Virus record (IMG/VR): IMGVR_UViG_3300031521_001337
Location: 1-64,000 of that record
DNA: 64,000 nucleotides
Direction: 5' to 3' (one strand)
The position numbers and the translations under genes are program-made. The notes beneath the pieces were generated by a model. The model was not told the DNA's origin. It saw nothing but the letters and a program-made list of their open reading frames with translations, and ran no database searches. Below are positions 35,716 through 59,352 of this stretch, in pieces; within the stretch, counting starts at the first letter, position 1, and the number at the start of each line of letters is the position of its first letter.

Positions 35716-35794
35716 GAGTGCATATTGTAACAATTCAGTTACAATAGATTTATACAATTGGTATAAGTTTAGGTCCTACGCGATGCTCAAACTC
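35716..35794 (+). ncRNA. Candidate twister-sister-like self-cleaving RNA
   Basis: P1 GAGU/ACUC, internal loop GCAU / GCUCAA, two internal hairpins; a C^A cut at 35788 gives the same AAACUCAAAAAC leader as the hammerheads. Confidence 0.4.
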
Positions 35795-35806
35795 AAAAAC
35801 ATCATA

Positions 35807-36100
35807 ATGAAAACATCTGAAGAAAATGCTAAATTAGTTATATCATGTGTTAATAATATCATATCAAAAGAAATTGATTCTTTTAGTAAAATTGAATTAA
35901 CAAAAATTTTAAAAGAAACTAAATGTCCTTATTCGTCAAGTATATTTAATCTTCTCAAATCTTGTGAATTAATCACAAATATATCACGAGGTAAATATAT
36001 ATTTACTACAACTCAACCAATATATTATGGAATTATTCAAAAAGAACTTGATAAAGCTATGAAAATGCAACAAGTTTATAATCATAATTCTAAAAAATAA
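35807..36100 (+). CDS. Hypothetical protein (winged-HTH-like)
   Basis: Start MKTSEEN after an A-rich leader. Confidence 0.6.
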   Translation: MKTSEENAKLVISCVNNIISKEIDSFSKIELTKILKETKCPYSSSIFNLLKSCELITNISRGKYIFTTTQPIYYGIIQKELDKAMKMQQVYNHNSKK

Positions 36101-36169
36101 AACAATATATATTATTCATTTAAGTAATTTTGAACGTTGGTATTAGTCATTGTAAAATGATAACATACA

Positions 36170-36259
36170 ACTCAGCTAGAGAGAGTATAACATTGGTTTC
36201 CGATGAGATCTAGACGAAACGAGAGAATAAGAGGAAACTCTAAAACTCTCGTAAAACTC
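36170..36259 (+). ncRNA. Hammerhead ribozyme, pseudoknot type (U4C core variant)
   Basis: ACUC/GAGU hairpin; loop CUAGA pairs with loop II UCUAG; core CCGAUGA...GAAA; stem III CGAGAG/CUCUCG; GUA^ at 36253; stem I GUUU/AAAC. Confidence 0.7.
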
Positions 36260-36359
36260 AAAACACATATCACAATGAATAAAACTGTATATTTAGCATC
36301 ATCTAGTGATGCACGTCACACATTACACAAAGTTTATAAATCTTATAAACCAGGTAATA

Positions 36360-36635
36360 ATGGAAAAAATTAAGGTTGATTTCAAATCACAAACTTTAGA
36401 GATTATATCTAATATAACTGTAAAAGAGTTATTAGCTATTACAAATGCTGTTGATCTTTCAAGTTTTACAATAATTAGTTCAATAAATAAGCTTGAAATT
36501 ACAGGTGTTAGAACTGAATCTGAGAATATTATAATTCTTAAGAGTCTAGGTTATTATACAAATAAAGTAATTGCTGAAAAACTTGGATTAAGTGAACGAA
36601 CAGTTTATCGTAAACTAAAAGAATTAGGTATTTAA
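36360..36635 (+). CDS. HTH DNA-binding protein
   Basis: NKVIAEKLGLSERTVYRKLKELG. Confidence 0.7.
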   Translation: MEKIKVDFKSQTLEIISNITVKELLAITNAVDLSSFTIISSINKLEITGVRTESENIIILKSLGYYTNKVIAEKLGLSERTVYRKLKELGI

Positions 36636-36699
36636 TCACACACTTTTGAGTCTCCGAAAGCCGTAAGGTGATTAGGAGATTTATTAAACTTATTAAATT

Positions 36700-36927
36700 A
36701 TGATAATAACAATTTATCTCATTGGAATTCCGTTATTCCCATTCATTATTATGCTTTTCACAAAGTTCTTTCCAAATGTTTTAGAATGTGATGATCCTGC
36801 TGATTATGCATTGGGTTATGGAATGATGTCATTATTTTGGCCATTTGTATTATTTGTTGCATCAATAGGTATAATCTATTATAAGTTTTATCAAATGATA
36901 AATACTATAGATAAACATAAAAAGTAG
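36700..36927 (+). CDS. Small membrane protein
   Basis: Two TM segments, SLFWP motif. Confidence 0.6.
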   Translation: MIITIYLIGIPLFPFIIMLFTKFFPNVLECDDPADYALGYGMMSLFWPFVLFVASIGIIYYKFYQMINTIDKHKK

Positions 36928-37201
36928 CAATACTCTCTCATAAACATAATTGAAAAAATCATTAGATCTGATGGTTTTTAGTACGGTACAGATATCCCGG
37001 GTTCAATTATGTTTACTTTCATAAAAGACTTATGATTTGATTAACCGTCGTCCGACGGTGTTGCATACGGTGCATAATAGTCCGGAGCCTATCATGAGTC
37101 TTTTTTACAATATACATTCCTCATCAGTCTGTATTTCTTTCTAATTATCATTATTTCTATCCCAACTATATTTAGTATTACAGTGATGTAAGAACAATAT
37201 G

Positions 37202-37279
37202 ACTCAGCCTAGGAGAGTATAACATCAGTTTCTGAAGAGACTAGGACGAAACGGGGAGCTCATCACTCCCGTCAAACTC
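37202..37279 (+). ncRNA. Hammerhead ribozyme, pseudoknot type
   Basis: CUGAAGA-G...C-GAAA core; pseudoknot CCUAG/CUAGG; stem III CGGGG/UCCCG; GUC^ at 37273; stem I GUUU/AAAC. Confidence 0.88.
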
Positions 37280-37294
37280 AAAAACTTATTTATT

Positions 37295-39135
37295 ATGATA
37301 ACATTAATCATTATTTATATTATTGGATTAATATTATGTCCAATATTATTACTTGTATTAGAATATAATTTTCCTGGTAGTATGTATTTAAATAACGGTC
37401 AAAATATCGGAGCATTTTTACAACATCATTAATTTGACCAATAGGTTTAATAATAATGGCAATATTTTTATTTGATCATATTGCATCTAATATTCATAAA
37501 AATTAATCAAATGCTAAACATAATATTAATTACAATCGTTATCATTTTAATAGTGGTAATGGTTGCAATTTTAGTAGCTCTTATAGTTGATGTATTTACA
37601 TACTTTAAATTACCAAAGATATGTATATTATATGGTATTATAATACTATTATTAATTGTTAACATTGCTATTCATTTAGAAAAATCAGTTTAAAATGAAA
37701 TTAAAAATCTTTATTATTAATATTGTTGTAGCAATAGTATTAATTGTTTCTTTTACTGCATGTAATTCTCAATCAAGAAGACATGCTCCAGTATTATCAA
37801 AAACTTACACAATAACTTACAAAGGATATCTTTCTGGTAAGTTTCTAAAACGTTCTACATTCATTAGTGCTCGTACTCCAATTGAAGCTGTACAAATACT
37901 TAAAGAACAAACGTTTGTTGGATTCGATAGTATTAGTGTTAACTCAATTAGACCTAAAGAATAATGATTAAAATTATTGTTAATATTATTGTAATAGTTT
38001 TGGTTATTATTCTTTTACGAGTATTAACATCTTGTGAAGCAAGAAGTGGGCATATGCATCAAGCTACAAAACCCACAATTGCTACACAAGTTGAATCAAT
38101 AACTAAACCAAAACATAAATTGGTTTACACATATTACATCACACACATTAAATCTCGGGATAAAATCAAGGTTTATGTGTATGATGATGATATAACATCG
38201 TACGAGTATCCAATTGATAAATTTAAAATCAAATAATCATGATAATATTATTATTACTTTTATTATGTTTCGATATATTTCTAACAAGAAAATATTATAT
38301 TGAAAAAGATCTTACAGGTGTATTACTTGGAGGTTTTGCGTGTGGATTTATAATGTGTGGGATTGTACTTATGTTGTGTATTAAGTTTCACATTCCATTA
38401 CAATAATCATGGTACTATTCTTATTAATTGTTGGATATTTATTATCCATTGTTCTGTGTAGTGTCTTATATAGAATTGCATCTCCGAAGTATTTAGATAT
38501 ATTTAGTAAATATGAAGCTGAATGTGATTTTATGTGGTTTATTCCTGGAATAAATACATTAATAGTGATATTTATGATTGGATTATTATTAATTGTTTTT
38601 ATCTGTATGTTATGCGATAAACTCATAAAAAGAGTTCGCTTTAATATCCGATTTAAATGGTTAGATAATTTCATCACCAAATTTAAAAATGAAGATCTAT
38701 AATGTTAACTAAAACTCAAGCAATAGTAATTTGTTTATCACCGTTCTTAATCTTCTATTTATTTGTAGAATTGTGTGCAATGTTTATATCAATAGAATGT
38801 AAAATCAAAAAACATGACTAAAACTGAAAAAACTCTATTATACATTGCACCATGGATTATCTTTTACTTGTTAGGTTCATTTATTGGACTACAATTCAAT
38901 ATTATCAAATGGCAAGAAGAATCACGAATGGGATATGTAATGCTTTCTTTACTTATTGATTGTGGAATATTAATGTTTAAATACATAAGCTAATGGTAAT
39001 TATACTCAGTCTATGTTTAGCATTTGATATATTTATGGGATTAATATGTTTTGATAAAGAAAATCATATTATGTCGCATTTATATGCTGCCGCAGCTGGA
39101 TTTTTATTAGCTGCAATTATTGTAAATATACTTTA
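37295..39135 (+). other. Cluster of small membrane and lipoprotein genes (e.g. 37695..37964, 37964..38236, 38409..38702)
   Basis: Tightly coupled short hydrophobic ORFs; lipobox-like FTAC and LTSC. Confidence 0.6.
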
Positions 39136-39139
39136 AACT

Positions 39140-39689
39140 CTTAGCATCAAGCAACTTTCATCAGATAAACGGTTGGATATGTATATTCTCTATATAATAA
39201 CGTTATAAATAATATAATCTCTTATATAAGAAGCATATCTGAATAACTAATCAAGAAGAGATTCAGTATGGTGGTTTGATGCCTTTAAACAGTATAATAC
39301 TAACTGCAAATAAGTATAATGAAAACCTGTGCGCAATCCTCCGATGAAAGTGTGGAACTTCCGAGTGTAAGGTATAACGGCTATATGTACAAATAGCATC
39401 CATTCTGTCAATCCTTGAAGACAAATTAATAAAAGATAGGTATACTAAAACCGATGCCGTGCTAATTGCTGGTGTCAAAAACAAGCCAACGTAATATCGT
39501 CCTGAAACTGGCTATGGGAGCAAAAGGGTGAAGCTCTTTATTACGAAAGAATGCTTCCCGGTTAGATTCACCGATTTTATCGGTGATGTACCGCGAAGTA
39601 AACAATGGTTATCATATTAATTTTGATAACAAACACTAAGGGAGTACACATCGTCGCATTTGGACATATAGTGTGTACTCTCTTTTTTA
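39140..39689 (+). ncRNA. Candidate large structured ncRNA (about 550 nt)
   Basis: No credible ORF; crossing 9-bp helices 39144-52/39274-82 and 39154-62/39343-51; several hairpins; ends in a terminator. Confidence 0.55.
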
Positions 39690-39692
39690 TTA

Positions 39693-39761
39693 ACTCAACC
39701 AGTAGAGTATAAAATAGTTTCTGATGAGACTGGACGAAATATGTTTAAACATATCAAACTC
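39693..39761 (+). ncRNA. Hammerhead ribozyme, pseudoknot type
   Basis: CUGAUGA-G...C-GAAA; pseudoknot CCAGU/ACUGG; stem III hairpin UAUGUUU-AAACAUA; AUC^ at 39755. Confidence 0.9.
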
Positions 39762-39777
39762 AAAAACAAATAAGATT

Positions 39778-39954
39778 ATGTCAAAAACTAAATCAATCAT
39801 CGCCATAACAGGTAACAATGTAAAAGTAGAAATAATATCAGGTTTAACTCCAAGACAAGCAGCTTATCAAAGAAGAGAGCTTGCTACATCCGAAGAAAAC
39901 TTTGATATGTTAGGTAAAACATGTGCAATTTATCGTACTAAAACTTGTAAGTAA
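39778..39954 (+). CDS. Small hypothetical protein downstream of ribozyme
   Basis: Start MSKTKSII; the track start at 39724 falls inside the ribozyme core. Confidence 0.6.
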   Translation: MSKTKSIIAITGNNVKVEIISGLTPRQAAYQRRELATSEENFDMLGKTCAIYRTKTCK

Positions 39955-40374
39955 TGAAACTATTTAAAGCTATTGCTATTGTAATAATGTGTGTGTCAGT
40001 TGGATTATTTATCTTAACACTATTTAAATAATGCATATCACATTCGAACCCGCATTTGGAGTATTGTTGATTGTTATCGCTCATACAATAATAACCCATT
40101 TATTTAATTGGTTACATCGTGTCGTACTTAAAGAATTCGAGATTTTCGTAATATTTATAGGATTATTTCATTTTTGTGAAGTAATGTTTGTATTTGCTAT
40201 GTTAACCGGTCTTTATTTAAAGTAAACTCTTTCGAGTTTCCAAACCATAGAAATATGGGGAGGAAACTCTTTTAATCTAATTAGTGTGTAAGATAGGTAC
40301 ATTAGGTGTACGCGCTACAGTTGGTAATTCTTATAAAAGGTGCAACCTTTCACACTTATTTCAAAACTTAAAAT

Positions 40375-40683
40375 ATGAATAAAATTACATTAAATAAAAG
40401 TTATGAATGTGATATATTAATTAGAGTATATGAATCACAAAATCCAAATGTACCTGAAAGTGATCAAATTGTAGGTGAAGTTTTATTTAAAGATAAACCT
40501 CATATTAGAGCATCTGCTTGGCTTCCAAAAGGTATTGCTGAATTTATAAATTCTGAACTATTAAAAATAGAAGATAAAAATTATAATATTCATATTTCTA
40601 ATGAATTACCATATCAAGTTGGAGTTCTCACTTCATGTAAAGAAAATTTTGATTTATATATGAATAAATTATTAAATAAATAA
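40375..40683 (+). CDS. Hypothetical protein
   Basis: 102-aa ORF with A-rich leader. Confidence 0.6.
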   Translation: MNKITLNKSYECDILIRVYESQNPNVPESDQIVGEVLFKDKPHIRASAWLPKGIAEFINSELLKIEDKNYNIHISNELPYQVGVLTSCKENFDLYMNKLLNK

Positions 40684-40690
40684 AAACAAA

Positions 40691-41179
40691 ATGGATTATA
40701 TTAAACTCTTTTATTGGCTCACAGTAGTCGATGGTTTCAAACATGTACTTTTAGGAGTATTAATTATCTTCGGAATTCTTTTAGCACTCAATGTTATATT
40801 GAAGCTGGTTTCATTTATCGAAAGTGATGAAGATTTAAATGATCGTTGTAGTAAACCTTTACGTTGGATAATTCCAATATTCTCAATTTGTTTACTTGCT
40901 CATGCATTCATACCAAGTAAAAAAGATACGTTGTTAATCATTGGTGGTGGAACTGCTATGAATTATGTTACAACTGATTCAACATGTAAACAAATTCCTA
41001 AAGAACTAAGTACATTTGTTATATCCGAATTAAAAGCAATGTCTGCGGATGCTAAAACAAGCTTAGGTGTTGTCGATCAACAAAATAAATTACTTGATGA
41101 AGCCAAGAAAATGTCTTCTAAAGAACTCATTGAGAAAATGAAGAATGATACATCATTTGCTAAAATTCTCTTAAAATAA
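40691..41179 (+). CDS. Membrane protein
   Basis: LFYWLTVVD, TM helices, FIPSKKD. Confidence 0.7.
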   Translation: MDYIKLFYWLTVVDGFKHVLLGVLIIFGILLALNVILKLVSFIESDEDLNDRCSKPLRWIIPIFSICLLAHAFIPSKKDTLLIIGGGTAMNYVTTDSTCKQIPKELSTFVISELKAMSADAKTSLGVVDQQNKLLDEAKKMSSKELIEKMKNDTSFAKILLK

Positions 41180-41267
41180 TTAAGCCATAGTTAGTATTTG
41201 TAAATTTTTATTGGATTTATACAGAACATTGTGAAATGTGAAGTATATTAGTATTATTATTTGATTT

Positions 41268-41303
41268 AAACGCAGCGGTTATAACGTCCGCTGCGTTTTT
41301 ATT
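41268..41303 (+). terminator. Terminator-like hairpin directly before hammerhead
   Basis: aaacgcagcgg...ccgctgcgttttt. Confidence 0.75.
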
Positions 41304-41305
41304 CA

Positions 41306-41370
41306 CCTCATCCAGAAGAGGCTAAAAAGTTTACTGAAGAGGCTGGACGAAACACATTATGTATAAACTC
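41306..41370 (+). ncRNA. Hammerhead ribozyme, pseudoknot type
   Basis: CCUC/GAGG hairpin; pseudoknot UCCAG/CUGGA; CUGAAGA...GAAA; short stem III; GUA^ at 41363; stem I GUUUA/UAAAC. Confidence 0.82.
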
Positions 41371-41532
41371 AAAACAAATTAAAAATGGAAAAAACTATTG
41401 TATTATCCGAAGTGGTTACTAAACACAAAAAGGTTAAAGCAGGTAAAATATTAACCTCATCTCAAAATGAAAAGCAAATTATGCGTAAAGCATGGAATGC
41501 AAAGTCTGATACTTTAATATCTTACAAGTAAA

Positions 41533-41853
41533 ATGATTGAACCAATTAGACCAAATCAGGTTAAACGTATTTTACCTGATTATATCATTGATTCAGTGAA
41601 TCAATTGATTGAAGAAAGATATAATGGTGGGTCTTTTACAATTACAAAGAAAGAAATCATTACTAAAGCTTTTAATCATCCGGATCAAACTGAATATGAA
41701 AATCGTTCATCATTTGAAAGACATTTATATGATAAAAAATATTTAGATTTCGAATCTCTTTATCACAAAGCTGGTTGGGAATGTGAATATATGTCTCCTG
41801 ATCGAGGTAATTCTAATTTTGATTCTTATTACAAATTCATTAATAAATTGTAA
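41533..41853 (+). CDS. Conserved phage hypothetical protein
   Basis: PIRP...LPDYIIDSVNQLI...LDFESLYHKAGWECEY. Confidence 0.7.
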   Translation: MIEPIRPNQVKRILPDYIIDSVNQLIEERYNGGSFTITKKEIITKAFNHPDQTEYENRSSFERHLYDKKYLDFESLYHKAGWECEYMSPDRGNSNFDSYYKFINKL

Positions 41854-41933
41854 CATGCAATTATCCTTAGGAATCATCATCATTGTAGCGATAGCTGCAG
41901 TGATGATAACTAACATCATTAAATCTAGATAGT

Positions 41934-42350
41934 ATGATAATTAAAATATTAGATTACGTAAGACAAGGAATATTTATTGCAATATTCTTTTTTATGTGTT
42001 TTTCATTTGGATATTTTTGTTATAATCCAAGTTGTCAAGGTACGATTATTCATCAAAAAGGTACTGTTACTGGAATGTGGGATCTTGGTGACAATGATTT
42101 ACAAATTTTTGTTACATATAAAGATGATTTTGGTGAATTTATTGATGTTCCTCGTAAAGAATTTAATAAAATAAAACTTAAAGATTCATATATTGGTAAT
42201 AAAACCAAAGAGATAGAACTTCCAATTATTTTTAAATGTTCTTATATATGTGGTATTATATCATCTATACTTTTATTTGGAATAACTTTATTGTGGTTAA
42301 TTTGTGGTAGTCATGTGTTCACCAAAAAATGGTGGTACGATAATTTTTAA
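41934..42350 (+). CDS. Membrane protein
   Basis: N- and C-terminal TM segments. Confidence 0.6.
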   Translation: MIIKILDYVRQGIFIAIFFFMCFSFGYFCYNPSCQGTIIHQKGTVTGMWDLGDNDLQIFVTYKDDFGEFIDVPRKEFNKIKLKDSYIGNKTKEIELPIIFKCSYICGIISSILLFGITLLWLICGSHVFTKKWWYDNF

Positions 42351-42591
42351 ATATGATAAAACTCATAACATTTAATGACACTAATGCTATTTGGACTGAC
42401 GAAGCTGTTGCTCCGTTATCCCAAATAGTGTGTCGTCAGTTACAGAACTTAGAACTTTTGCCTGATTATGTTATGTTGCAATTTAATTGTAATGAAGCTG
42501 ATCTTGCTCGAGTATCTAATAGTAGAAATCAATTTCATGCGTGTATTCAACGGTATTATGTACCAGAGTTATTAATTAAATCTAAAAAGAC

Positions 42592-45249
42592 ATGTTAAAG
42601 AATAAATATTTAAAATATAATCCGTCTATTACTTTTGAAATATTTGAAAAAGTATATGATAAATTAATAGGTCAAGGATGGAATACTTCTGTTCCTAAAG
42701 ATACTTTATATCGTCAATTTAGTGGAGGAACATGGCCTTATATAGTTAATACTAGAGAAAAAGAATTTTATTCAAGACATAATAGTAATAATAAAACAGA
42801 AATAACTATTCAAGAACTTTTAGGTTATGATCCATTTGTTTCTGATGATTTATTAGAAAGGTGGCTTAAAGAAACCAAAGAAAGATCATTTTCTTTATAC
42901 GGATTAGAAAATCATATTTCATTAGGTGCAACTTGTCCATATGAAGAAGTTTATTTAAAATTAAAAGGAAGTAATCCTAAAGAAAGAGCTCAAATTCTTT
43001 ATGATTTATGGAATTCTGAATTAACTTCATTACCTAAAAAATGGTGTATTGCTGTTAATAAACTTATGCCTGATTTTGAATTGATTAGTGAATGGCGAAA
43101 AAAAACATCTCGTTATGATGATGAATATAGAGGAACTGCCGGTTATTTATTTGAAGATGGTGCTTGGAATAATATAAATCATTTAGAAGTTCCTGAACTC
43201 ACAATGGATCAGTTTAAAAAATGGGTATTTAAACCTAAAGAATTCACATTACCATTAAAATGGCGTGTTATAGCTACTTCTGAAGCTGAAGGTAAACTTC
43301 TTATTCCTTATGCTAATGAATTATTTAAATCAAAAGGGTGGACTAACAGTAATGTACAAAATTATTGGTTATGTATAAGTCCTGGTAAGTTTAATAGTTT
43401 GTCAAAAAATACTGATAAGCTTAGTGAATATGAAGAAATAACTTTTACTCAATTCAAACAATATGTTTTGAAAGAAACTTCAACTAATACAGAAAAGGAT
43501 TGGACTAAAGTTTCTAAAGAAGAACTTCTTGCTGAAGCTAATAAAAGGTATCCTATTGGAACTAAATACAGAAATAAACCAACTGGATCAATATATACAT
43601 TAGGATCTAAATTAACAATTGATCCAAGAAATAATGTATGTGATGAAGCTAGACAATGTCATGTATTTCTTTGTGGTAAATGGGCTGAAATAGTTGAATT
43701 AGCGAAAAAAGATTGGAATGAACGTGATACTCAAGAAGTTTTAGACGAAGCAATTCGTCGTTATCCTATTGGTACTATTGTTATGTCTCCTGTGGTTTCA
43801 AATGATAAATATACTGTTTTAAAAACTCCTGCATTTTTTAAAGAAAATAAAAGAGTTATAACAGATGGTGACAAAAAAGTTACATTATTTGACTTTGATA
43901 AAAATACTTGGGCAGAAATTGTTAAAGAAACTCAACCTGAAAAATGGTCTGTTGGCACTTATGTTGTGCTTTTAAAAGATTATGGTGGACATCCTAAAGG
44001 AACTATTGATAAAATAATAAGAGATAATGGTCCAGTAACTGTTAAAGTATCACTTCCTTATAATGGAACTGATTATTGTAATTTATCTAAAGCTAGTGAA
44101 GCTAAATGGTTTGCTACTAAATCTGAAGCTGAAGCATTTGCAAAAACTCAATTTGAAGAACCTATGTCAACAGAAGACGATTTAACCGGTCGATATTTAA
44201 GAGCAACTGTGGATCATCCACAAAGTACATCATTAAAAAAAGGTGATATTATTAAAATTCTTGATCAATTTTCACTTGTTTCTTATCAAATTGAAAAAGG
44301 TTGGACTTATACAACAAACAATTCTACTTCATCTGATTTTGAAGTGTTACCAAAGGATTATAAACCAGAAAGTACATCACCTAATTTGAATTTTCAACAT
44401 AATGAATTTTATAGGGTAACTTTATCAAAGTATAGTTATATCTTTCTATTTACTGATGCAAAATTAGAAAAAGAAAGAATAGATACAATAATTTATTATG
44501 ATTGTTGTAATAAAAAATGTCTTGAGAACGGTGGATTTATTTATTTAAAAGATATAACTGTATGTGAACGAGTTCCATTTGAAACAGTAAAACGTGATTA
44601 TTCTGAATTGTATTGTAAGATATATACTCAACCAAAATCTGAAACACCATCAAAATTCGAAGTAAGTAAATGGTATTCGCAAGATGCTAGTGGAAATGCT
44701 AAGAATTTTCGTAAATGTTTTAAGGTTCATACAGATCATTTTGAATATGATGAATGTATTAATCGTGGAGTATGGAAAAAAGATTCAGCACATACTTATT
44801 GGGATACTCCGCATTTAGCTGATATGGAAGTTGTTAATAAGATTATTAATGATCATATTTCACGAACTGAACCTAAATCAAAATTATATGAAGGTTATAC
44901 TGTTGGTGATTATATTACAATTACTAGAGAACCTAAATTGTGGTCAAGTCGTTGTAATCGTAAAAATCTACTTACTAAAGTATCATATCCATTTACAGCA
45001 AAAATTACTAGAATTAAAATAGACGGTTTCGATTGTCATATTGAAGCTGGTGATGGTGGTTGGTCTTTAGATCACATGCTTAAAAATAGTTGCGTTCGTA
45101 AAGCTACATCTGAAGAGATTGGTAATTTAATCCACAATGAAATGAATAAATTATTGAATATTCCTTATAAATTTGCATCAGAACATTCTGTTATAGCATC
45201 AAAGAATTTTGATGATGAAATCGATTTTATTTATCTTTCAGAAGATTAA
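42592..45249 (+). CDS. Large mosaic repeat protein
   Basis: Repeats LxEAxxRYPIGT...WAEIV and ITFxQFKxxV; all Trp are TGG. Confidence 0.75.
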   Translation: MLKNKYLKYNPSITFEIFEKVYDKLIGQGWNTSVPKDTLYRQFSGGTWPYIVNTREKEFYSRHNSNNKTEITIQELLGYDPFVSDDLLERWLKETKERSFSLYGLENHISLGATCPYEEVYLKLKGSNPKERAQILYDLWNSELTSLPKKWCIAVNKLMPDFELISEWRKKTSRYDDEYRGTAGYLFEDGAWNNINHLEVPELTMDQFKKWVFKPKEFTLPLKWRVIATSEAEGKLLIPYANELFKSKGWTNSNVQNYWLCISPGKFNSLSKNTDKLSEYEEITFTQFKQYVLKETSTNTEKDWTKVSKEELLAEANKRYPIGTKYRNKPTGSIYTLGSKLTIDPRNNVCDEARQCHVFLCGKWAEIVELAKKDWNERDTQEVLDEAIRRYPIGTIVMSPVVSNDKYTVLKTPAFFKENKRVITDGDKKVTLFDFDKNTWAEIVKETQPEKWSVGTYVVLLKDYGGHPKGTIDKIIRDNGPVTVKVSLPYNGTDYCNLSKASEAKWFATKSEAEAFAKTQFEEPMSTEDDLTGRYLRATVDHPQSTSLKKGDIIKILDQFSLVSYQIEKGWTYTTNNSTSSDFEVLPKDYKPESTSPNLNFQHNEFYRVTLSKYSYIFLFTDAKLEKERIDTIIYYDCCNKKCLENGGFIYLKDITVCERVPFETVKRDYSELYCKIYTQPKSETPSKFEVSKWYSQDASGNAKNFRKCFKVHTDHFEYDECINRGVWKKDSAHTYWDTPHLADMEVVNKIINDHISRTEPKSKLYEGYTVGDYITITREPKLWSSRCNRKNLLTKVSYPFTAKITRIKIDGFDCHIEAGDGGWSLDHMLKNSCVRKATSEEIGNLIHNEMNKLLNIPYKFASEHSVIASKNFDDEIDFIYLSED

Positions 45250-45299
45250 CAAATAAAAATAATTAAAATAAATCAATTAAATTTTTAAAAATTAAAGTT

Positions 45300-50815: not shown

Positions 50816-51020
50816 ACAAATAAGAGAATTGCTAATTAGTTGATCGTGAATAAATATTGTGAGAAACCAAAGTCCTCACCTTAGCATTATACTTGAAATG
50901 GTATGAGTTCATTAATTCCATAGATCAAATATTAGAGTTATAGATATATTATTTTTATGGTTAATATAATTTCAATCTCTTTGGAAAGGATTGACAATTC
51001 TTTTTTTAAACTTATTAGTT

Positions 51021-51109
51021 GGGCATGTGGTTAAGTAAATGGAGTAGCTGTAGAGTCGCTACAATAGCATACATGAAAGTGAGATATAGGTTCGAGTCCT
51101 AGCCTGTCT
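51021..51109 (+). ncRNA. Degenerate tRNA-like element
   Basis: T arm TAGG-TTCGAGT-CCTA and weak acceptor; anticodon region replaced by a long irregular hairpin. Confidence 0.4.
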
Positions 51110-51408
51110 TTGAAGTCAGAGATACCGAAAGGACTTTGTGCTAATAGGTTTTTTCAAAACAAATCAATATTATTAATAAATTAACAAAGAAGTTCTTATG
51201 AAGAAGAAGAATGGAGTTAACCACTCAATGGAGTTGAAAGTAATTATACGTCGCAAATCAGTAATCGAAAGATTGGAAACACAGTTAAAAGCTGGTACTA
51301 AGCAAACTAAAACTGCTGGTATTGTACCACTTACTGATGCTGATCGTGCACGTATTCAAAAAGAACTTGAAACGTTAAAAAATCGATTAACTCGTAACAA
51401 GTAAAATC

Positions 51409-53565: not shown

Positions 53566-53951
53566 GATGGGAAAAATCACAAAAATAACAGTAAAAGTTC
53601 CACAGGAAGTAACACTTCCTGATGGAATTTATAGTGGAACTTGGGGTGGTTATGTTATTGATATTAAATTCAATGGCAAAAATTACGAACTTACTACTGA
53701 AGAAGGAGTAAGAGGAATTGATATTAAAGTTGTAGTAACCATTAAAGATGGAGTTGCAACATATAGTGAACTTAAAAATTAAATTCTAAAATAATTCAAA
53801 CAAATGAAAAAACAATTAGTTGATTTTTACAATGCATATGTTGCATCAGGATCTAATGTATCCGCTCACGCGATTGCTAATGGAGTAACTAATACCGATT
53901 GCGTACTTATGGTACAAATGGGTAAGAAGTACTCTGAAGCATAAAAACCCT

Positions 53952-54037
53952 TTGGATATAGCTCAGCCTGGTTAGAGCGTCGGCAGCAAGACAAAAACAT
54001 TAGCCGGAGGTCGGAGGTTCAAATCCTTTTATCCATA
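53952..54037 (+). ncRNA. tRNA-like RNA with an 18-nt anticodon loop
   Basis: Canonical D arm, T arm and acceptor; stem TCGGC/GCCGG encloses AGCAAGACAAAAACATTA. Confidence 0.75.
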
Positions 54038-54226
54038 CAAAATAAAATGGTAAAAACGCGTATGTGTATAAAACGGGAAGACGTCGCTGCTGGATTCAGC
54101 CAATTGGAAACAATTGATCGATACTCACACATTAACTTAGTAATCTTCTTAGGGTTATATTAGATGTGAGTGAAAATACACACCATTTTTTAAAATACAC
54201 AATTATTAATTAAAACAAAAAAGCTT

Positions 54227-54601
54227 ATGTACAAACAAGCGAGTAAAGCAAAATTACGTATCGCCGTTATTGGCGTAGGTTTATTATCAGTTGAGCAGTT
54301 ATGGTCTGCTAATGTTAATGACCTTATTAACACAGAAGAATTACTTCAAGAAGAAGTATCAAAACTTGAAAAGACCTCTCGTAGAGCTACTCAAGTTAAA
54401 TCAAAAGATACTGAAATTTTAAAATTGAAATTAGCTATTGTAAGCGATGTTCTTGATACCCTTGTTGCAGAACAAGAAGCACGTAAAACTGCTGCTGATG
54501 TCAAAAAACATAATGCTGAAATCGATGCCCTTATTGCTAAGAAACAAGGTGAAGCTCGTGAAGGTCTTTCAATTGAAGAATTGGAAAAATTACGTAAGTA
54601 A
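54227..54601 (+). CDS. Conserved phage coiled-coil protein
   Basis: ASKAKLRI...GLLSVEQLW...SIEELEK. Confidence 0.7.
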   Translation: MYKQASKAKLRIAVIGVGLLSVEQLWSANVNDLINTEELLQEEVSKLEKTSRRATQVKSKDTEILKLKLAIVSDVLDTLVAEQEARKTAADVKKHNAEIDALIAKKQGEAREGLSIEELEKLRK

Positions 54602-55343
54602 TGGTTGACAAAACAGCATTAGGTCAAGCTCGTAACATTGAATGCGAGCTTGATCAACCATTAAAAATGCATATAAGTACAATGGAATTAAGATCATTGT
54701 CTTTAATGTGTGGTGAAAATGGTTCAGGTAAAACAATGATTAATAAAATTGTATATTTTTCTTCAATGTTTACATTTATTGATTTAGGTAAGTATTCAGG
54801 AATGTTTGCTGACTTAGGTTATATTGGTGAAACTGGTGAAGATTTGTGTCAATTTATATTCAATCATACGTTTATTAATCCTGAAGAAATATCAGGTAAA
54901 ATGACTGTGTTTTTGAAAATGGAACATTTAGTTGTCGTATTGTAGAAGGCAAAGTTAAAGAACTTCTTGTAACATATAATGCTGATGTTAAAGAGGGCAC
55001 CTATCCAAAATACATGTCAACCACAACTCGATTATTTACTGCAATGGAATCAATTCTTACATTATTTAAAGTATTACCAAAAGGTGAAATTCTTAAACAT
55101 TGTATGTTATTTGATTTACTTCATTGTCTTACTATTCAGAATTTTGCAATGACTGTTAAAGATCTTTCAGCAGGATTAACTGAAAAACTTAAAGAAGATG
55201 GATTAAACATTGTATCATTATTATATGATGAAACATCCGGTAAATTCTCGTATATTGATTTACAAAATAATACACGACCAGTTGGATCATTAGGTAATGG
55301 ACATCAATCCTTACTTAATATGTATTTAGCTGTCGAAATTTAA
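54601..55343 (+). pseudogene. ABC/AAA-type ATPase split by a frameshift near 54910
   Basis: Walker A GENGSGKT in the first ORF and signature-like SLGNGHQ in the second; one extra base in the T-run joins them. Confidence 0.55.
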
Positions 55344-55494
55344 TTGAAAGGAAGCGCGTAACTCTCGGTTAGCATATAGGAACCCTCTGAATAGTGGATG
55401 GTTTGGTATATAGGTGAAACTCTTTATACTGCCACTATGTAAGGCTATGGAATGCATTTCAATTTTTAAATCAAAACAAAACAAAACAAAAACA

Positions 55495-56346
55495 ATGAAA
55501 ACAAAATTTACAAAAGGTCAATTTGCCTTATTAGGTGGATTGATATGTTCAGTGATTCTTTTTATTTCGTGTTTAACTTATTACATGGAATTCCCTCATG
55601 ATTTAAATGGTTCCTTTGGGGCATTTCATATCATGTTTAACATCGTTTGGTACATCTTCTCAGGTGTTGCTTGTATGTTGTATGTAATTCAACTGATCTG
55701 TAATGGAACAGGTGAAGATGGACCGTTTACAGATAATATAATTGAAGATGATGATGATGATGTTCCCGATAAAAAGTTTTCAGTTAAGAAATACTTTATT
55801 GGTTTAGTGATTATATTTGGTCTATATTGGATTGGTACTATCGCTTATGGTCACTTTGAAAAAGCATCCGTTGTTTATAATCAAAATGTAACTTATACAC
55901 ACGCTCTTGACCAAAAGGTTAAAGAAAAGAAAGGTTTTTTTGATAAAATGTGGAAAACTTATTCAACTAAAGAAAAGATTACCGGTATGGACAAAGATAT
56001 GTTCATTCAAGTAACTAAAATCATTATGGAAAATCGTAAAGATGGTCAAAATGTAACCTGGAAATGGATGCAAGAAAATCAACAAATTCCTTATGATCAA
56101 TTTACTCGATTCTATGTAGACCTAAGTAACTTTATTGAATCTCAACGTGAAGGCTATTTTAATCTTGAAAAAGAATGTCAAACTATTGCCGCAGCTAACA
56201 ATATTATGTTAGATACATTTCCTAACAATTTGTATAATAAGGTTATGAAATGTCCTCACTTAGTTGCTGAATACGGATTTACATCTGATCACACAGAACA
56301 AGTGTTTAAATCGAAAAAAGAAAACATTATTAATTCTCTTAAATAA
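55495..56346 (+). CDS. Membrane protein with LemA-like C-terminal domain
   Basis: Three TM segments; FDKMWK, WMQENQ, LDTFPNN. Confidence 0.6.
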   Translation: MKTKFTKGQFALLGGLICSVILFISCLTYYMEFPHDLNGSFGAFHIMFNIVWYIFSGVACMLYVIQLICNGTGEDGPFTDNIIEDDDDDVPDKKFSVKKYFIGLVIIFGLYWIGTIAYGHFEKASVVYNQNVTYTHALDQKVKEKKGFFDKMWKTYSTKEKITGMDKDMFIQVTKIIMENRKDGQNVTWKWMQENQQIPYDQFTRFYVDLSNFIESQREGYFNLEKECQTIAAANNIMLDTFPNNLYNKVMKCPHLVAEYGFTSDHTEQVFKSKKENIINSLK

Positions 56347-56355
56347 TTAAAAACA

Positions 56356-56703
56356 ATGAATAAATTTGAAGCAATGTTGGCTGGTAAGCCAGAAGCAATT
56401 CAAGCTCAAAGAGCCAAAGACGTAGCAGAAGATTGTAAAATCGCTACTGAAGAAATCGTACGTGCCAACGAAAAGAAAGTTCGTGACATCAAACGTCAAA
56501 TTACTCAATTATCTGATTTATCACCGGAAACAACTTTATCTCTACAAGTTGTAAAACCAGGTTTCAACGCAGAAAAATGGGCTGCTGAACTTCACGATCT
56601 TGAAGTGGAATTACTTGCCGCTGAAGTTGACTTGAAAGTCGCTAAGAAAACTTATACAAATTGGTTTTCAGAAGGTAAAGAAAAAGCACCTAAAGCTGAG
56701 TAG
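56356..56703 (+). CDS. Coiled-coil protein
   Basis: 115 aa. Confidence 0.65.
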   Translation: MNKFEAMLAGKPEAIQAQRAKDVAEDCKIATEEIVRANEKKVRDIKRQITQLSDLSPETTLSLQVVKPGFNAEKWAAELHDLEVELLAAEVDLKVAKKTYTNWFSEGKEKAPKAE

Positions 56704-56705
56704 TT

Positions 56706-58859
56706 ATGGGACAGTTGAAAGTATTTCTTTCAGCATCCAAATCTGCTAATCCGATTAATGTTCAAATTATACGAGACATTCTTAAAAAAAGAGGATGTCT
56801 CGTATTTGAATATGATCCTGCTGATCCTAATGAGCAGATGTTGGGCTGTGATCTGCTATATATTATTCCACCAGAAGGTTGTGATGTTATTCCAAGAATA
56901 ACTGTTGGACGTGGACAATACAAAGCAATCAAAAAATGGGAAAAAGAAAAAAGCAAAAAAACAATTGTTATTATCAATTATCTTAAAAGAGAGTTTGTTT
57001 TTATAAAAATGGAACAAATTAATGTTCGTATTTGTAATAAAACAAGAATTGGTGCAGTTTGTGTCAACACGTTTGAATTTGATATGAATTATGAACAAAT
57101 GTGTAAACTTACTGAATTTATTGATAAACCTAAAGGTGTTCACTGTGCTAATCAACAACAATGGGATTTTGCTGCTTCAAAGCTCAAAAGAATTGATAAA
57201 GTTGGTTATAGAGAGTGTGGTGATATTATTGATATTAATTCTCCTAATAATTCATTTTTTAGTACTTCTAATAAAGCTAGTTCTTATGAAATTTTATCAT
57301 TTGAAGTTTGGTGTAAAGAGAATAATTATTCAGTCAATAAACCTAAATGGTATGAAACTCTTAAAATTGGTGATAAAGTAAAATGTATTGGTAATGTAAA
57401 TGGATATGTTTCTCGTAAAATTGGAGAAATTCTTACAATTGATATTGATTTTTCAAAATGTAAAAAAATTAGTTTTGCTGGTGATTCATCTACATTTTTT
57501 GAGGAATTTGAATTAGTTTCTCGTTTAACTGATGAAAAACCTATAGATCCAAAAATTGCATTATTAGAACGTGCCATTAAAGAATATCCTATTGGTACTA
57601 AATTTAATTCTGCAACTTCAGGTTTAGTTTCAATTACAGGTATATGTGTTAAAGATATTCCTAAATTTAATAGTAGTGGAAATATCGGTACTAAAGATAA
57701 TGGCACTAATGGTATTATTTATAATGCTTATACTGGTAAATGGGCTGAAAAAATTCCTGAAGATACTACTCCATTTGTTGAACCTATTAAAAAAGATTTA
57801 CCTTGGGGGCAATGGTATAAAAAGAAAGATTACATCGTTCATTTGTATCATAGAAACTCTGTTTGGGGATTTCATAAAGGACAATGGTTTGAATCTGAAG
57901 GATTTTCTGAAGAAGGTTTAATTCCAACTTCTGAATATGATTCTCATGAGTTATTTAAAACAGAAATACTAAAGAGATATCCTCTTAAAAGATTTACTGA
58001 TTTACGTAATACTTTAGATTTTGATATTAAGAATTATAATCTTAGTTTCAATAATAAAAGTACTCAAATTTATATTCCTGTTGATCCAAATCCTGTACGT
58101 GCTAATGCTAGTGCAAGGATATTTAATAACGGTGTTTGGGCTAAAGAAGTATCTAGATTTGAAGTTGGTAAATGGTATAAATTAGGTGTTTGGATTAGTA
58201 AATTTTCACATTTAGAAAATTCTTATCAGTTTTGGGGTGAAAATATAAATACAGATTCTAAATTTCATGATAAAAAAGGATATTTAAGTTTAAAAGATTA
58301 TACTCCAGTTTTAATTACTGATTTATCTGAAATTCAACAATATCTTCCTAAAGAACATCCTGATAAAATCATTATTGAAAAACTTAGTGAATTTGGTTAT
58401 TTTGTTGCAATTGATAATGATCCTGTAGGTGTATCTATTATGAAAAAAGGTGATATTGGAATTGGTATTAGTGAATCATGTTTTAAATTTGATTCTCCTA
58501 AAGCAATTCATCTTAAAGGTGTGAATTGGTCTGGAAATAAAGATTCTATTGGATTAAAATGGTTTAAAACTTTAGGAGAAGCAGAAGCTTTTGCTAGAAC
58601 TTTAGATTCTATTCCAGTATCTGTTGGAAATCAAACTTTCTTTATTAATAAAGATGAGTATGAAAAACAAGAAGTTAAGCACATTAAACCTTTTTTTGAG
58701 CCAACCACAGTTTTATCTACTGAAGAATTAAAAGTTCAATTAGAGAAATTACGTAAAGTAGGTGGTTTATATAGAACAACTTGTGAAATGTTATCACCTA
58801 ATGCTTTTAAAAGTATTGATAAGAAGAAAAAGTTGTTGAAAATCTCAACAATTATCTAA
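56706..58859 (+). CDS. Mosaic repeat protein, paralogous to 42592..45249, with N-terminal TIR/NDT-like domain
   Basis: KVFLSAS...CDLLYIIP; LLERAIKEYPIGTKF...GKWAE; FEVGKWY. Confidence 0.65.
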   Translation: MGQLKVFLSASKSANPINVQIIRDILKKRGCLVFEYDPADPNEQMLGCDLLYIIPPEGCDVIPRITVGRGQYKAIKKWEKEKSKKTIVIINYLKREFVFIKMEQINVRICNKTRIGAVCVNTFEFDMNYEQMCKLTEFIDKPKGVHCANQQQWDFAASKLKRIDKVGYRECGDIIDINSPNNSFFSTSNKASSYEILSFEVWCKENNYSVNKPKWYETLKIGDKVKCIGNVNGYVSRKIGEILTIDIDFSKCKKISFAGDSSTFFEEFELVSRLTDEKPIDPKIALLERAIKEYPIGTKFNSATSGLVSITGICVKDIPKFNSSGNIGTKDNGTNGIIYNAYTGKWAEKIPEDTTPFVEPIKKDLPWGQWYKKKDYIVHLYHRNSVWGFHKGQWFESEGFSEEGLIPTSEYDSHELFKTEILKRYPLKRFTDLRNTLDFDIKNYNLSFNNKSTQIYIPVDPNPVRANASARIFNNGVWAKEVSRFEVGKWYKLGVWISKFSHLENSYQFWGENINTDSKFHDKKGYLSLKDYTPVLITDLSEIQQYLPKEHPDKIIIEKLSEFGYFVAIDNDPVGVSIMKKGDIGIGISESCFKFDSPKAIHLKGVNWSGNKDSIGLKWFKTLGEAEAFARTLDSIPVSVGNQTFFINKDEYEKQEVKHIKPFFEPTTVLSTEELKVQLEKLRKVGGLYRTTCEMLSPNAFKSIDKKKKLLKISTII

Positions 58860-58866
58860 ATAGAAT

Positions 58867-58907
58867 AGGGATGCTATGGGATCACGATTCTATAGCATCC
58901 TCGTTTT
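58867..58907 (+). terminator. Terminator-like hairpin directly before pistol ribozyme
   Basis: ggatgctat...atagcatcc then gtttt. Confidence 0.65.
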
Positions 58908-58908
58908 A

Positions 58909-58971
58909 ACTCCACTAAGGGAGTATAAAGTTATTAAGCTTAGTGCGTTACACAATTCGTGTAGGTTAAAC
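58909..58971 (+). ncRNA. Pistol ribozyme
   Basis: P1 ACUCC/GGAGU; loop ACUAAG pairs with CUUAGU; AUAAA; UUAAG; GCG; P3 UUACAC/GUGUAG; G^U site at 58965/58966. Confidence 0.88.
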
Positions 58972-58989
58972 ACAAAATGATAAAAAGAA

Positions 58990-59352
58990 ATGTATGATGT
59001 AACAAATTTAGTAGAGGTTATTAAATTAGCCCATGAATGTGAAACCCCAATTGATGAATTCACATTATTAGTTGAAAAAGAATTAACAAAACTTCACCCA
59101 ATTAAACATGAAGAACGAAAATCAGAAGAAGCATTAGGTATTCGTGATTTACGTAATGTTTTACCACAAGGTGAATTTGCCGGTAAACTTTCAGTTGCCG
59201 TTGAACAAATTGAAAAAACAATGACCAAACGTGAAACTGCGTATGCATTAGTTTGTTCAATTGCACAAATAACAAAAATATCACAACATCCACTTGTTAA
59301 AATGATTATGAAATCACAACAAGAAGATGGTGAAGATTTTAGAGATGAATAG
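58990..59352 (+). CDS. Hypothetical protein, paralog of 59779..60246
   Basis: Shared EQIEKTMTKRE / EEIEKTLTKRE motif. Confidence 0.7.
   Translation: MYDVTNLVEVIKLAHECETPIDEFTLLVEKELTKLHPIKHEERKSEEALGIRDLRNVLPQGEFAGKLSVAVEQIEKTMTKRETAYALVCSIAQITKISQHPLVKMIMKSQQEDGEDFRDE

What the first reader, a model, noticed from the sequence alone, without database searches (positions are those of the whole stretch)
35716..58990. Self-cleaving ribozyme array that appears to set uniform 5' ends on early mRNAs
Seen: four hammerheads (36170, 37202, 39693, 41306) and one pistol (58909), all on the sense strand of the early arm. Predicted cuts leave 21, 21, 22, 21 and 24 nt before the next ATG (36275, 37295, 39778, 41385, 58990). 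The hammerhead leaders all begin (U/A)AAACUCAAAA. Three ribozymes sit within a few nt of a terminator-like hairpin (39689, 41303, 58907). Established: hammerhead and pistol chemistry gives 5'-OH products, and Bacteroidetes use A-rich, SD-less leaders. Inference: a protein-free processing system cuts the long early transcript into stabilised units with a fixed leader, using different ribozyme classes interchangeably.
Basis: partly seen in the sequence, partly recalled or inferred. Interest (0 to 1): 0.9.

Follow-up and report, generated by a model that had tools for sequence, protein, structure and literature searches.

The report
Ribozyme array before phage gene starts
Four hammerhead ribozymes and one pistol ribozyme really do sit in a large phage's probable early gene arm, each placed to cut 21-24 bases before a start codon; this is a clean example of a known but functionally unexplained kind of phage ribozyme array, and an unclassified RNA element sits in the same position before a sixth gene.

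Summary
Rfam finds four RAGATH-1-type hammerheads and one pistol, all on the + strand. Two hammerheads and the pistol score above the curated cut-off. Two hammerheads score below it, and one of those carries the U4C core variant. The predicted cuts fall after 36253, 37273, 39755, 41363 and 58965. They leave 21, 21, 22, 21 and 24 nt of unstructured, A-rich, SD-less leader starting AAAC(U/A)CAAAA. Strong hairpins with U-runs directly precede three of the ribozymes.

The spacing is general. In about 95 other phage ribozymes of these two classes, 62-63% cut 15-50 nt before an ORF, far more than uniform placement would give.

The interpretation, protein-free processing of polycistronic RNA into units with a fixed leader, is plausible but untested. 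It is also not new in principle: Perreault et al. 2011 described multi-hammerhead phage operons and a halovirus hammerhead 13 nt before an early gene.

The new result is a ~75-nt conserved structured RNA at 35715-35794 with no Rfam match. It occupies the same position before the same leader. I found 10 copies in 7 phage contigs, with covarying helices, sometimes in arrays with pistol, twister and hammerhead ribozymes. It may be a new self-cleaving class.

Verdict: a real feature and a new member of a known kind, of moderate to good interest.

The parts
36169..36258 (+). HH1. A RAGATH-1-type type I hammerhead with the U4C core variant and a long two-part stem III. Cut after 36253.
   Evidence: 5-bp loop-loop pseudoknot CUAGA/UCUAG. 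It scores 36.2 bits, below the cut-off.
37201..37278 (+). HH2. A RAGATH-1 hammerhead. Cut after 37273.
   Evidence: 59.4 bits, above the cut-off; pseudoknot CCUAG/CUAGG.
39692..39760 (+). HH3. A RAGATH-1 hammerhead. Cut after 39755.
   Evidence: 67.6 bits. (pseudoknot CCAGU/ACUGG). An ortholog is present in L012.
41305..41368 (+). HH4. A RAGATH-1 hammerhead with a 3-bp stem III. Cut after 41363.
   Evidence: 50.0 bits, below the cut-off; pseudoknot UCCAG/CUGGA.
58909..58970 (+). Pistol ribozyme. Cut between G58965 and U58966.
   Evidence: (41.6 bits, cut-off 34.5).
36254..36274 (+). 21-nt leader after HH1, before ORF 36275-36373. That ORF overlaps the HTH gene at 36360-36635.
   Evidence: leader unstructured.
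37274..37294 (+). 21-nt leader after HH2, before ORF 37295-37432.
39756..39777 (+). 22-nt leader after HH3, before ORF 39778-39954.
41364..41384 (+). 21-nt leader after HH4, before ORF 41385-41531.
58966..58989 (+). 24-nt leader after the pistol, before ORF 58990-59352. It contains an out-of-frame AUG at 58977.
39638..39691 (+). Strong hairpin plus U-run directly 5' of HH3.
   Evidence: -20.5 kcal/mol, z -4.7.
41270..41303 (+). Hairpin plus U-run directly 5' of HH4.
   Evidence: -16.1 kcal/mol, z -5.1.
58861..58908 (+). Hairpin plus U-run directly 5' of the pistol.
   Evidence: -24.4 kcal/mol, z -7.4.
35715..35794 (+). Unclassified conserved structured RNA with helices P1, P1.1, H1 and H2 and a conserved junction. 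Its P1 pairs with leader positions +3 to +6. The leader is 35789-35806 and the ATG is at 35807.
   Evidence: No Rfam match.

Best explanation
The window is the first 64 kb of a ~213-kb low-GC phage contig with two divergent arms. On the arm that uses the standard genetic code, probably the early one, five small self-cleaving ribozymes lie in the sense strand at the head of gene blocks. Four are pseudoknotted type I hammerheads of the RAGATH-1 kind and one is a pistol. When RNA polymerase transcribes through them, each folds and cuts itself. The upstream RNA ends in the ribozyme body with a 2',3'-cyclic phosphate, and in three cases that body sits just after a strong hairpin. The downstream RNA starts with a 5'-hydroxyl and a short unstructured A-rich leader of 21-24 nt beginning AAAC(U/A)CAAAA, which runs straight into the start codon. 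The weak AU-rich closing helix of 3-6 bp lets the product leave. The ribozymes therefore act as protein-independent intercistronic processing sites, or insulators. They uncouple each gene block from whatever RNA lies upstream and give it a defined, minimal, SD-less translation initiation region. What is shown: the ribozyme folds, the core motifs, the cut positions, the spacing, the shared leader, and the generality of the spacing. What is inferred: co-transcription with upstream genes, cleavage in vivo, and any effect on stability or translation.
For: The ribozymes are identified by Rfam. All four hammerheads have a 5-bp loop-loop pseudoknot with compensatory changes. The cut-to-ATG distances are 21-24 nt although the upstream noncoding gaps are 49-552 nt. 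Outside this phage, 41 RAGATH-1-type hammerheads and 54 pistols from viral contigs cut 15-50 nt before an ORF of at least 30 codons in 62% and 63% of cases. Where the intergenic slack is at least 60 nt, this holds for 22 of 34 against 3.8 expected, and for 18 of 38 against 6.7 expected. Short pistol leaders lack SD motifs (1 of 17) and long ones carry them (10 of 17). This fits a cut placed just upstream of a complete ribosome binding region. The leaders fold with about 0 to -3 kcal/mol. None of 50 + arm starts has an SD-like motif. Related phages keep the same leader behind different elements: a RAGATH-1 hammerhead, a plain hammerhead, or the unclassified element. Literature precedent comes from PMC3088659. 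Multi-hammerhead prophage operons cleave in vitro and in E. coli. A halovirus hammerhead lies 13 nt before an early helicase gene, and the mapped 5' end of that transcript falls within 3 nt of the cut.
Against: There is no expression or end-mapping data for this phage. HH1 carries U4C, which lowers activity in vitro (PMC3088659), and HH4 has a 3-bp stem III. Both score below the Rfam cut-off. If the hairpins with U-runs are efficient terminators, little RNA would reach three of the ribozymes. In relative L012 the same leader also occurs with no ribozyme (leader starts at 6983 and 8218), so the leader can work without a cut. The four hammerheads may be paralogs, so part of the uniform leader could be inherited rather than selected. 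About a third of ribozymes elsewhere are not close to an ORF start.
Confidence: 0.55

Rival explanations
1. Cleavage is needed for translation itself. In an SD-less host of the Bacteroidota type, a free 5' end about 20 nt from the AUG lets the ribosome load at internal cistrons. The ribozymes would then be translation activators rather than mere RNA separators.
For: Short leaders never fall below 13 nt for hammerheads or 23 nt for pistols, and they peak at 25-29 nt. The + arm has no SD motifs at all. In fungal and plant RNA viruses, 5'-UTR hammerhead cleavage is required for cap-independent translation (PMC13725137).
Against: Only the first 5-6 nt of the leader are paired before cleavage, so the initiation region is already open. 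About 45 other + arm genes start without any ribozyme. L012 uses the same leader with no ribozyme.
Confidence: 0.25
2. The ribozymes serve the upstream RNA. They would back up or replace termination by cutting read-through transcripts just past the hairpin. That would give upstream mRNAs a protected 3' end made of the hairpin, the folded ribozyme and a cyclic phosphate.
For: Hairpins with U-runs end 1-5 nt before HH3, HH4 and the pistol. The same arrangement appears in L012, in L177 (a sub-threshold pistol-like match and a twister) and before the L185 element.
Against: This adjacency is rare in general: 3 of 55 hammerheads and 2 of 66 pistols, against 1.5% of random positions. HH1 and HH2 lack it. 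It also does not explain the tight spacing to the downstream ATG.
Confidence: 0.15
3. The array is a set of duplicated or mobile cassettes made of ribozyme, leader and a small accessory ORF. On this view the uniform leader and spacing reflect common descent or the insertion mechanism, not selection on 5' ends.
For: The four hammerheads share stem I (AGUUU/AAACU) and the first 10-12 leader bases. The motif AACUCA recurs at the start of the 5' hairpin and at the start of the leader. The downstream ORFs are small and unrelated to each other.
Against: The leaders diverge after position 12, yet the distance is kept. A different ribozyme class (pistol) and an unrelated element keep the same leader and distance. 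The spacing holds across about 95 unrelated phage ribozymes.
Confidence: 0.1
4. Cleavage is conditional and acts as a timing switch between early and later expression. The trigger could be ionic conditions, a phage or host protein, or alternative pairing of GAGU with the leader's ACUC.
For: The weakened copies (U4C in HH1, the short stem III in HH4) could depend on a factor. The 3' strand of the 5' hairpin could alternatively pair with the leader.
Against: No ligand-binding or alternative structure is supported by covariation. HH2, HH3 and the pistol look like standard fast cleavers.
Confidence: 0.08

Closest known systems
Multi-hammerhead arrangements in prophage operons (Perreault et al. 2011, PMC3088659)
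   Same: Several self-cleaving ribozymes lie in one orientation and flank single genes or short gene blocks of phage origin. They cleave polycistronic RNA in vitro and in E. coli.
   Different: Here there are two ribozyme classes plus an unclassified element. All share one leader and sit at a fixed 18-24 nt from the start codon, in a lytic-type jumbo phage arm. That regular spacing was not described there.
Halovirus HF1/HF2 hammerhead (HHphage) upstream of the early helicase gene (PMC3088659)
   Same: The ribozyme is a few nucleotides (13) upstream of the first ORF of an early polycistronic transcript. The mapped 5' end coincides with the cut.
   Different: That case is a single ribozyme with a core insertion in an archaeal virus. 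This one is an array with standard or near-standard cores.
RNase III processing of the phage T7 early polycistronic mRNA (my own knowledge, not checked here)
   Same: A long early transcript is cut between cistrons at structured sites. This leaves hairpin-protected 3' ends and separate messages.
   Different: T7 uses a host protein enzyme. Here the RNA would cut itself and leave 5'-OH and cyclic phosphate ends.
RiboJ-type synthetic ribozyme insulators (my own knowledge, not checked here)
   Same: A hammerhead placed before the ribosome binding region removes variable upstream RNA, so the downstream gene sees a constant 5' end.
   Different: RiboJ is engineered and keeps a hairpin on the product. 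These elements are natural and leave a bare 21-24-nt leader.
5'-UTR ribozymes of fungal and plant RNA viruses that enable translation (PMC13725137)
   Same: Type I hammerheads and other classes lie in 5' UTRs, different classes are used interchangeably, and cleavage is linked to translation initiation.
   Different: Those are eukaryotic hosts with cap-independent initiation and RNA genomes.

Membership tests
Hammerhead ribozyme, RAGATH-1 type (RF03152) | Score at or above the Rfam gathering threshold (56.3 bits) | tested here: inconclusive
   HH3 (67.6) and HH2 (59.4) pass. HH4 (50.0) and HH1 (36.2) do not.
Hammerhead ribozyme, RAGATH-1 type (RF03152) | Three-stem junction with core CUGANGA ... 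GAAA, an A15.1-U16.1 pair, and a non-G base before the cut | tested here: met
   HH2, HH3 and HH4 meet this fully. HH1 has C at position 4 (the U4C variant) and is otherwise complete. The same variant recurs in L054.
Hammerhead ribozyme, RAGATH-1 type (RF03152) | A 5' hairpin whose loop pairs with the loop of the 1-bp stem II (pseudoknot), followed by a UAUAA-type linker | tested here: met
   All four have a 5-bp complement, each with a different sequence. The linker is visible.
Hammerhead ribozyme, RAGATH-1 type (RF03152) | Site-specific self-cleavage | not testable with these tools
   This needs in vitro transcription or end mapping.
Pistol ribozyme (RF02679) | Score at or above the gathering threshold, with P1, P2, P3, the A-rich linker, the loop-junction pseudoknot and a G-U cleavage dinucleotide | tested here: met
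   41.6 bits against a threshold of 34.5. The loop segment CUAAG is complementary to CUUAG. The GU is at 58965/58966. P2 is weak, with 3 A-U pairs.
Pistol ribozyme (RF02679) | Site-specific self-cleavage | not testable with these tools
   This needs a bench assay.
Intercistronic mRNA processing system (T7 RNase III-like or RiboJ-like in function) | The cut site lies just upstream of a complete translation initiation region, more often than chance allows | tested here: met
   The window shows 21-24 nt. In other phages the counts are 22 of 34 against 3.8 expected, and 18 of 38 against 6.7 expected.
Intercistronic mRNA processing system (T7 RNase III-like or RiboJ-like in function) | The ribozymes are co-transcribed with upstream genes, and cleavage changes the fate of the downstream message | not testable with these tools
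   No promoter could be assigned. TAnnTTTG is not enriched in intergenic DNA (4 of 27 hits in 18% of the bases). The sigma-70-type scan is at shuffle level.
Any known self-cleaving or other Rfam family, for the element at 35715-35794 | A match to a curated covariance model | tested here: not met
   No + strand match at E up to 10, even when only 106 nt were searched.
Self-cleaving ribozyme (new class), for the element at 35715-35794 | Conserved secondary structure with covariation and a conserved junction | tested here: met
   10 copies. 91.8% of cells are paired against 80.3% when shuffled. 8 of 17 pairs show changes on both sides. 0 of 500 shuffles reach this, and slid controls reach at most 43.5%.
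Self-cleaving ribozyme (new class), for the element at 35715-35794 | Self-cleavage | not testable with these tools
   The case rests only on positional analogy.

The most novel reading that the evidence does not exclude
The ~75-nt element at 35715-35794 is a new class of self-cleaving ribozyme, or at least a new RNA that sets or marks the mRNA 5' end. It matches no Rfam family. I found 10 copies in 7 phage contigs, as arrays of up to three. Other copies lie on the same strand as twister-P3 and hammerhead ribozymes and a sub-threshold pistol-like match. It occupies the same position as the hammerheads and the pistol: its closing helix pairs with leader bases +3 to +6, and the AAACUCAAAA leader then runs 18-23 nt to the start codon. 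If true, phages of SD-less hosts use at least four or five interchangeable RNA devices to give genes a fixed short leader.
Probability: 0.25. Interest if true: 0.85.

Novelty: new member of a known kind. Interest (0 to 1): 0.55.

Why it matters
What the many small self-cleaving ribozymes in phage genomes actually do has been an open question since at least 2011. This locus gives a sharp, testable form of one answer. The cut is placed to leave a minimal, constant, SD-less leader. The ribozyme class does not matter. The same rule holds statistically across about 95 other phage hammerheads and pistols. The locus also points to an unclassified conserved RNA in the same position, found by the same guilt-by-association reasoning that earlier led to pistol, hatchet and twister-sister. 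If the processing role is confirmed, these elements would be natural counterparts of synthetic ribozyme insulators. They could also serve as parts for gene expression in Bacteroidota, where standard ribosome binding sites do not work.

Tried and rejected
1. DNA similarity of 35700-42600 to deposited phages: none.
2. Promoters. The sigma-70-type scan is at shuffle level (87 found against 83 expected). The Bacteroides-type TAnnTTTG motif is not enriched between genes. Promoters stay unassigned.
3. Hairpin plus U-run next to the ribozyme as a general rule: rejected. It occurs at 3 of 55 hammerheads and 2 of 66 pistols, against 1.5% of random positions. My detector missed HH4, so its sensitivity is imperfect.
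4. The element as a known ribozyme (twister-sister, hatchet, hairpin and others): no Rfam match.
5. The element as a DNA promoter. This is less likely, because its 5' end covaries with leader bases +3 to +6 and both hairpins covary. It is not excluded.
6. More copies of the element. The metagenome scan returned only phages already seen. A genome scan found none. A looser viral scan added L185 and L193.
7. A cultured model phage. The + arm of Cellulophaga phage phi17:2, which shares a 59%-identical protein, has no ribozyme above Rfam cut-offs and no copy of the element.
8. The RAGATH-1 pattern in 185,579 species-representative genomes: no match, so this gave no host clue.
9. Orthologous-position swap test. 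Only distant relatives were reachable (L012/L056, L178). A single-protein search found only identical contigs.
10. Fold-energy z-scores of regions upstream of other + arm starts do not discriminate, because known ribozymes also score weakly. The structure at 40283-40355 is not significant (z -0.69).
11. The downstream small ORFs are not homologous to each other.


Full report
**What the window is.** The window equals the first 64 kb of viral contig IMGVR_UViG_3300031521_001337, which is 213,486 bp long. It is about 30% GC and has two divergent arms that meet near 34.3-34.7 kb. The minus arm carries tail fibre, portal, GroEL-like and ribonucleotide reductase genes. It is recoded: treating TGA as sense raises long-ORF coverage from 0.67 to 0.87, with 6.2 in-frame TGA per 1000 codons. 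The plus arm does not change (0.73 to 0.74, 1.1 per 1000). A suppressor-type tRNA with anticodon UCA lies at 30014-30087 on the minus strand. Recoded late genes opposite standard-code early genes is a published pattern for recoded phages; that statement rests on my own knowledge and was not checked here. None of 50 plus-arm starts has an SD-like 4-mer at -20 to -4. Those 20 bases are 49% A and 7% G, against 36% and 17% for the arm as a whole. A 718-aa protein is 59% identical to proteins of Cellulophaga phages phi17:2 and phi4:1. A host in Bacteroidota is thus plausible but not established.

**The observation.** Rfam finds four RAGATH-1 hammerheads and one pistol, all on the + strand. HH3 (67.6 bits), HH2 (59.4) and the pistol (41.6) pass their curated cut-offs. 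HH4 (50.0) and HH1 (36.2) do not. HH1 scores low for two reasons: it has a long two-part stem III that the model skips, and it has C at core position 4. Perreault et al. note that U4C considerably lowers activity in vitro but still supports viroid infectivity (PMC3088659). The same variant recurs in an unrelated contig, L054. HH4 has only a 3-bp stem III. In all four hammerheads the loop of the 5' hairpin is complementary over 5 bp to the loop of the one-pair stem II. The sequences differ each time: CUAGA/UCUAG, CCUAG/CUAGG, CCAGU/ACUGG and UCCAG/CUGGA. That is compensatory evidence for the pseudoknot, and it shows that the 5' hairpin belongs to the RNA.

The leaders are essentially unstructured. 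Strong hairpins with U-runs end 1-5 nt before HH3, HH4 and the pistol. HH1 and HH2 have no such hairpin directly upstream.

**Is the spacing more than chance?** In the window the noncoding gaps upstream of the ribozymes are 49-552 nt, while the downstream gaps are 21-24 nt. I collected other phage examples by pattern scans of viral contigs and parsed their cut sites. Among 41 distinct RAGATH-1-type hammerheads, the cut lies 15-50 nt before an ORF of at least 30 codons in 62% of cases (median 32.5 nt, mode 25-29). Among 54 pistols the figure is 63%. Where the intergenic slack is at least 60 nt, 22 of 34 hammerheads fall in that range against 3.8 expected under uniform placement, and 18 of 38 pistols against 6.7 expected. 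No pistol cut lies closer than 23 nt to the start, while 41% of pistols begin within 15 nt of the upstream stop codon. Pistol leaders of 31 nt or less almost never contain an SD-like motif (1 of 17). Longer leaders often do (10 of 17). The simplest reading is that these ribozymes are placed so that the cut leaves just a complete ribosome binding region.

**Interchangeable classes and a constant leader.** An alignment of the five units shows a common frame: a 5' hairpin, a UAUAA-type linker, a weak closing helix, and then the leader AAAC(U/A)CAAAA. In other phages the hammerhead stem I has other sequences, so the ribozyme does not require AAACU. Here the closing helix appears adapted to the leader. 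Relatives keep the same leader behind different devices:
- L012 has an HH3 ortholog.
- L179 has a RAGATH-1 hammerhead and a plain type I hammerhead.
- L177 has a pistol-like match (30.7 bits, below the cut-off) and a twister-P3 on the same strand.
- L012 also has the leader with no ribozyme, with leader starts at 6983 and 8218. The leader therefore does not strictly need a cut.

**An unclassified element in the same position.** The exact leader also occurs at 35789, 18 nt before ATG 35807, with no Rfam ribozyme upstream. The 75 nt before it are conserved in distant phages. With a covariance model I found 10 copies in 7 contigs. L178 has three copies within 3 kb and L179 has two.

The fold has these parts:
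- a 4-bp helix P1 between the 5' end and leader bases +3 to +6;
- an inner helix GCAU/AUGC;
- a variable hairpin H1;
- a 9-10-bp hairpin H2;
- a conserved junction, AGGUCC-NNN-GCGAUGCUC.

P1 occurs as GAGU/ACUC, CACU/AGUG, GUUU/AAAC and AAGU/ACUU. On the model alignment, 91.8% of cells pair, against 80.3% in shuffles and at most 43.5% when partners are slid. Eight of 17 pairs show changes on both sides, and 0 of 500 shuffles reach the observed values. That alignment is fitted to the model, and there are only ten sequences. The distance from the end of the conserved core to the start codon is 18-23 nt in 8 of 10 copies. In L185 the element follows a hairpin plus U-run by 8 nt.

Because the 5' end covaries with the leader, the element is most likely RNA and not a promoter. 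Whether it cleaves itself, binds a factor, or acts like an antiterminator RNA cannot be decided here.

**How it most likely works.** The best-supported model is protein-independent intercistronic processing. Established ribozyme chemistry gives the downstream block a 5'-OH end and a fixed minimal leader. The upstream RNA keeps the ribozyme body with a cyclic phosphate, and in three cases a strong hairpin lies just before it. It is known that both end types are poor substrates for the usual end-dependent decay enzymes. That the phage exploits this is inference. A sharper variant holds that the free 5' end is needed for SD-less initiation. It is attractive in view of recent work on RNA viruses (PMC13725137), but it is weakened by the many plus-arm genes that start without a ribozyme. 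The hairpins could be partial terminators or 3' stabilisers. Their adjacency to ribozymes is specific to this phage group.

**Comparison with what is known.** Both ribozyme families are curated in Rfam. Ribozyme clusters near phage genes are well known (PMC4604425, PMC3088659). Perreault et al. showed multi-hammerhead operons that cleave in vitro and in E. coli. They also described a halovirus hammerhead 13 nt before an early gene, with a matching mapped 5' end. A 2019 review states that processing of polycistronic transcripts has been suggested but not established (PMC6765202). The finding is therefore a new member of a known kind. Three things are added here: the quantified spacing rule, the constant leader across classes, and the unclassified element.

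**Limits.** All functional statements are inferred. My ORF calls are simple (ATG starts, at least 30 codons, standard stops). The pattern scans sample only ribozymes that match the chosen core strings. No cultured relative with these elements was found.

Noticed in passing
window 35715-35794 (leader 35789-35806, ATG 35807); also L012 6380-6462, L177 3095-3169, L178 4792-4876, 5522-5610 and 7724-7797, L179 4605-4695 and 11032-11180, L185 7908-7988 (-), L193 7684-7758 (-): A conserved ~75-nt structured RNA with no Rfam match sits directly before the same AAACUCAAAA leader that the ribozymes produce. Its helices covary. Some copies lie in arrays beside twister and hammerhead ribozymes and a sub-threshold pistol-like match.
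   Followed up: yes
window 37023-37106 (conserved core 37054-37090); L012 about 7380-7450: A long closing stem whose sequence differs between the two phages encloses a 37-nt core that is 89% identical between them (GGUGUUGCAU.CGGUG.AUAAUAGUCCG.AGCC). A U-run follows. The element lies upstream of a hammerhead in both phages and has no Rfam match.
   Followed up: partly
window 1-34208 (- strand) and 30014-30087 (-): The structural arm is TGA-recoded (6.2 in-frame TGA per 1000 codons, against 1.1 on the + arm). A tRNA with anticodon UCA lies on that arm.
   Followed up: partly
window 53952-54037 (+): Rfam finds a tRNA-like sequence (47.5 bits) with 18 nt where the 7-nt anticodon loop should be. 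ARAGORN does not call it. It could be an intron-containing or a disrupted tRNA.
   Followed up: no
window 36169-36195, 37201-37227, 39692-39716, 41305-41329 compared with 58909-58929: The 5' domain of the RAGATH-1 hammerheads is a short hairpin whose loop makes the pseudoknot, followed by a UAUAA linker. It closely resembles pistol P1 plus its AUAAA linker, both here and in the two Rfam consensus sequences. This may be a shared tertiary module or a shared origin.
   Followed up: partly
window 36170-36175 and 36255-36260, 39693-39698 and 39757-39762, and the equivalent positions at the other ribozymes: AACUCA, or a one-base variant, occurs both at the start of the 5' hairpin and at the start of the leader. 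Each ribozyme is therefore bracketed by an imperfect direct repeat. The 3' strand of the hairpin (GAGU) could also pair with the leader's ACUC.
   Followed up: no
window 40234-40269 and 40283-40355; L012 8674-8712: A strong hairpin with a U-run follows ORF 40031-40225 and is conserved in L012. In the window, a ~73-nt possible multi-stem structure then ends 19 nt before ATG 40375, but its fold energy is not significant (z -0.69). In L012 the hairpin is followed directly by a 17-nt leader and an ATG, which argues against the hairpin being an efficient terminator.
   Followed up: partly
window 58977-58997: The pistol leader contains an out-of-frame AUG 11 nt after the cut. It opens a 6-codon ORF that ends in TGA and overlaps the main start at 58990.
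   Followed up: no
window 39137-39691: A 555-nt stretch without a convincing + strand ORF lies upstream of HH3. It is locally richer in GC and has only a weak RAGATH-7 match (19.6 bits against a cut-off of 111.8).
   Followed up: no
L012 6983 and 8218: The leader AAACUCAAAA occurs 21 nt before an ATG without any ribozyme. One copy follows a hairpin and a TGTATAAT motif. The other overlaps the stop codon of the preceding ORF.
   Followed up: partly
window 35264-35291: A very strong terminator-like hairpin (12 bp followed by T8) follows the first + arm gene (34749-35246), upstream of the ribozyme cluster.
   Followed up: no
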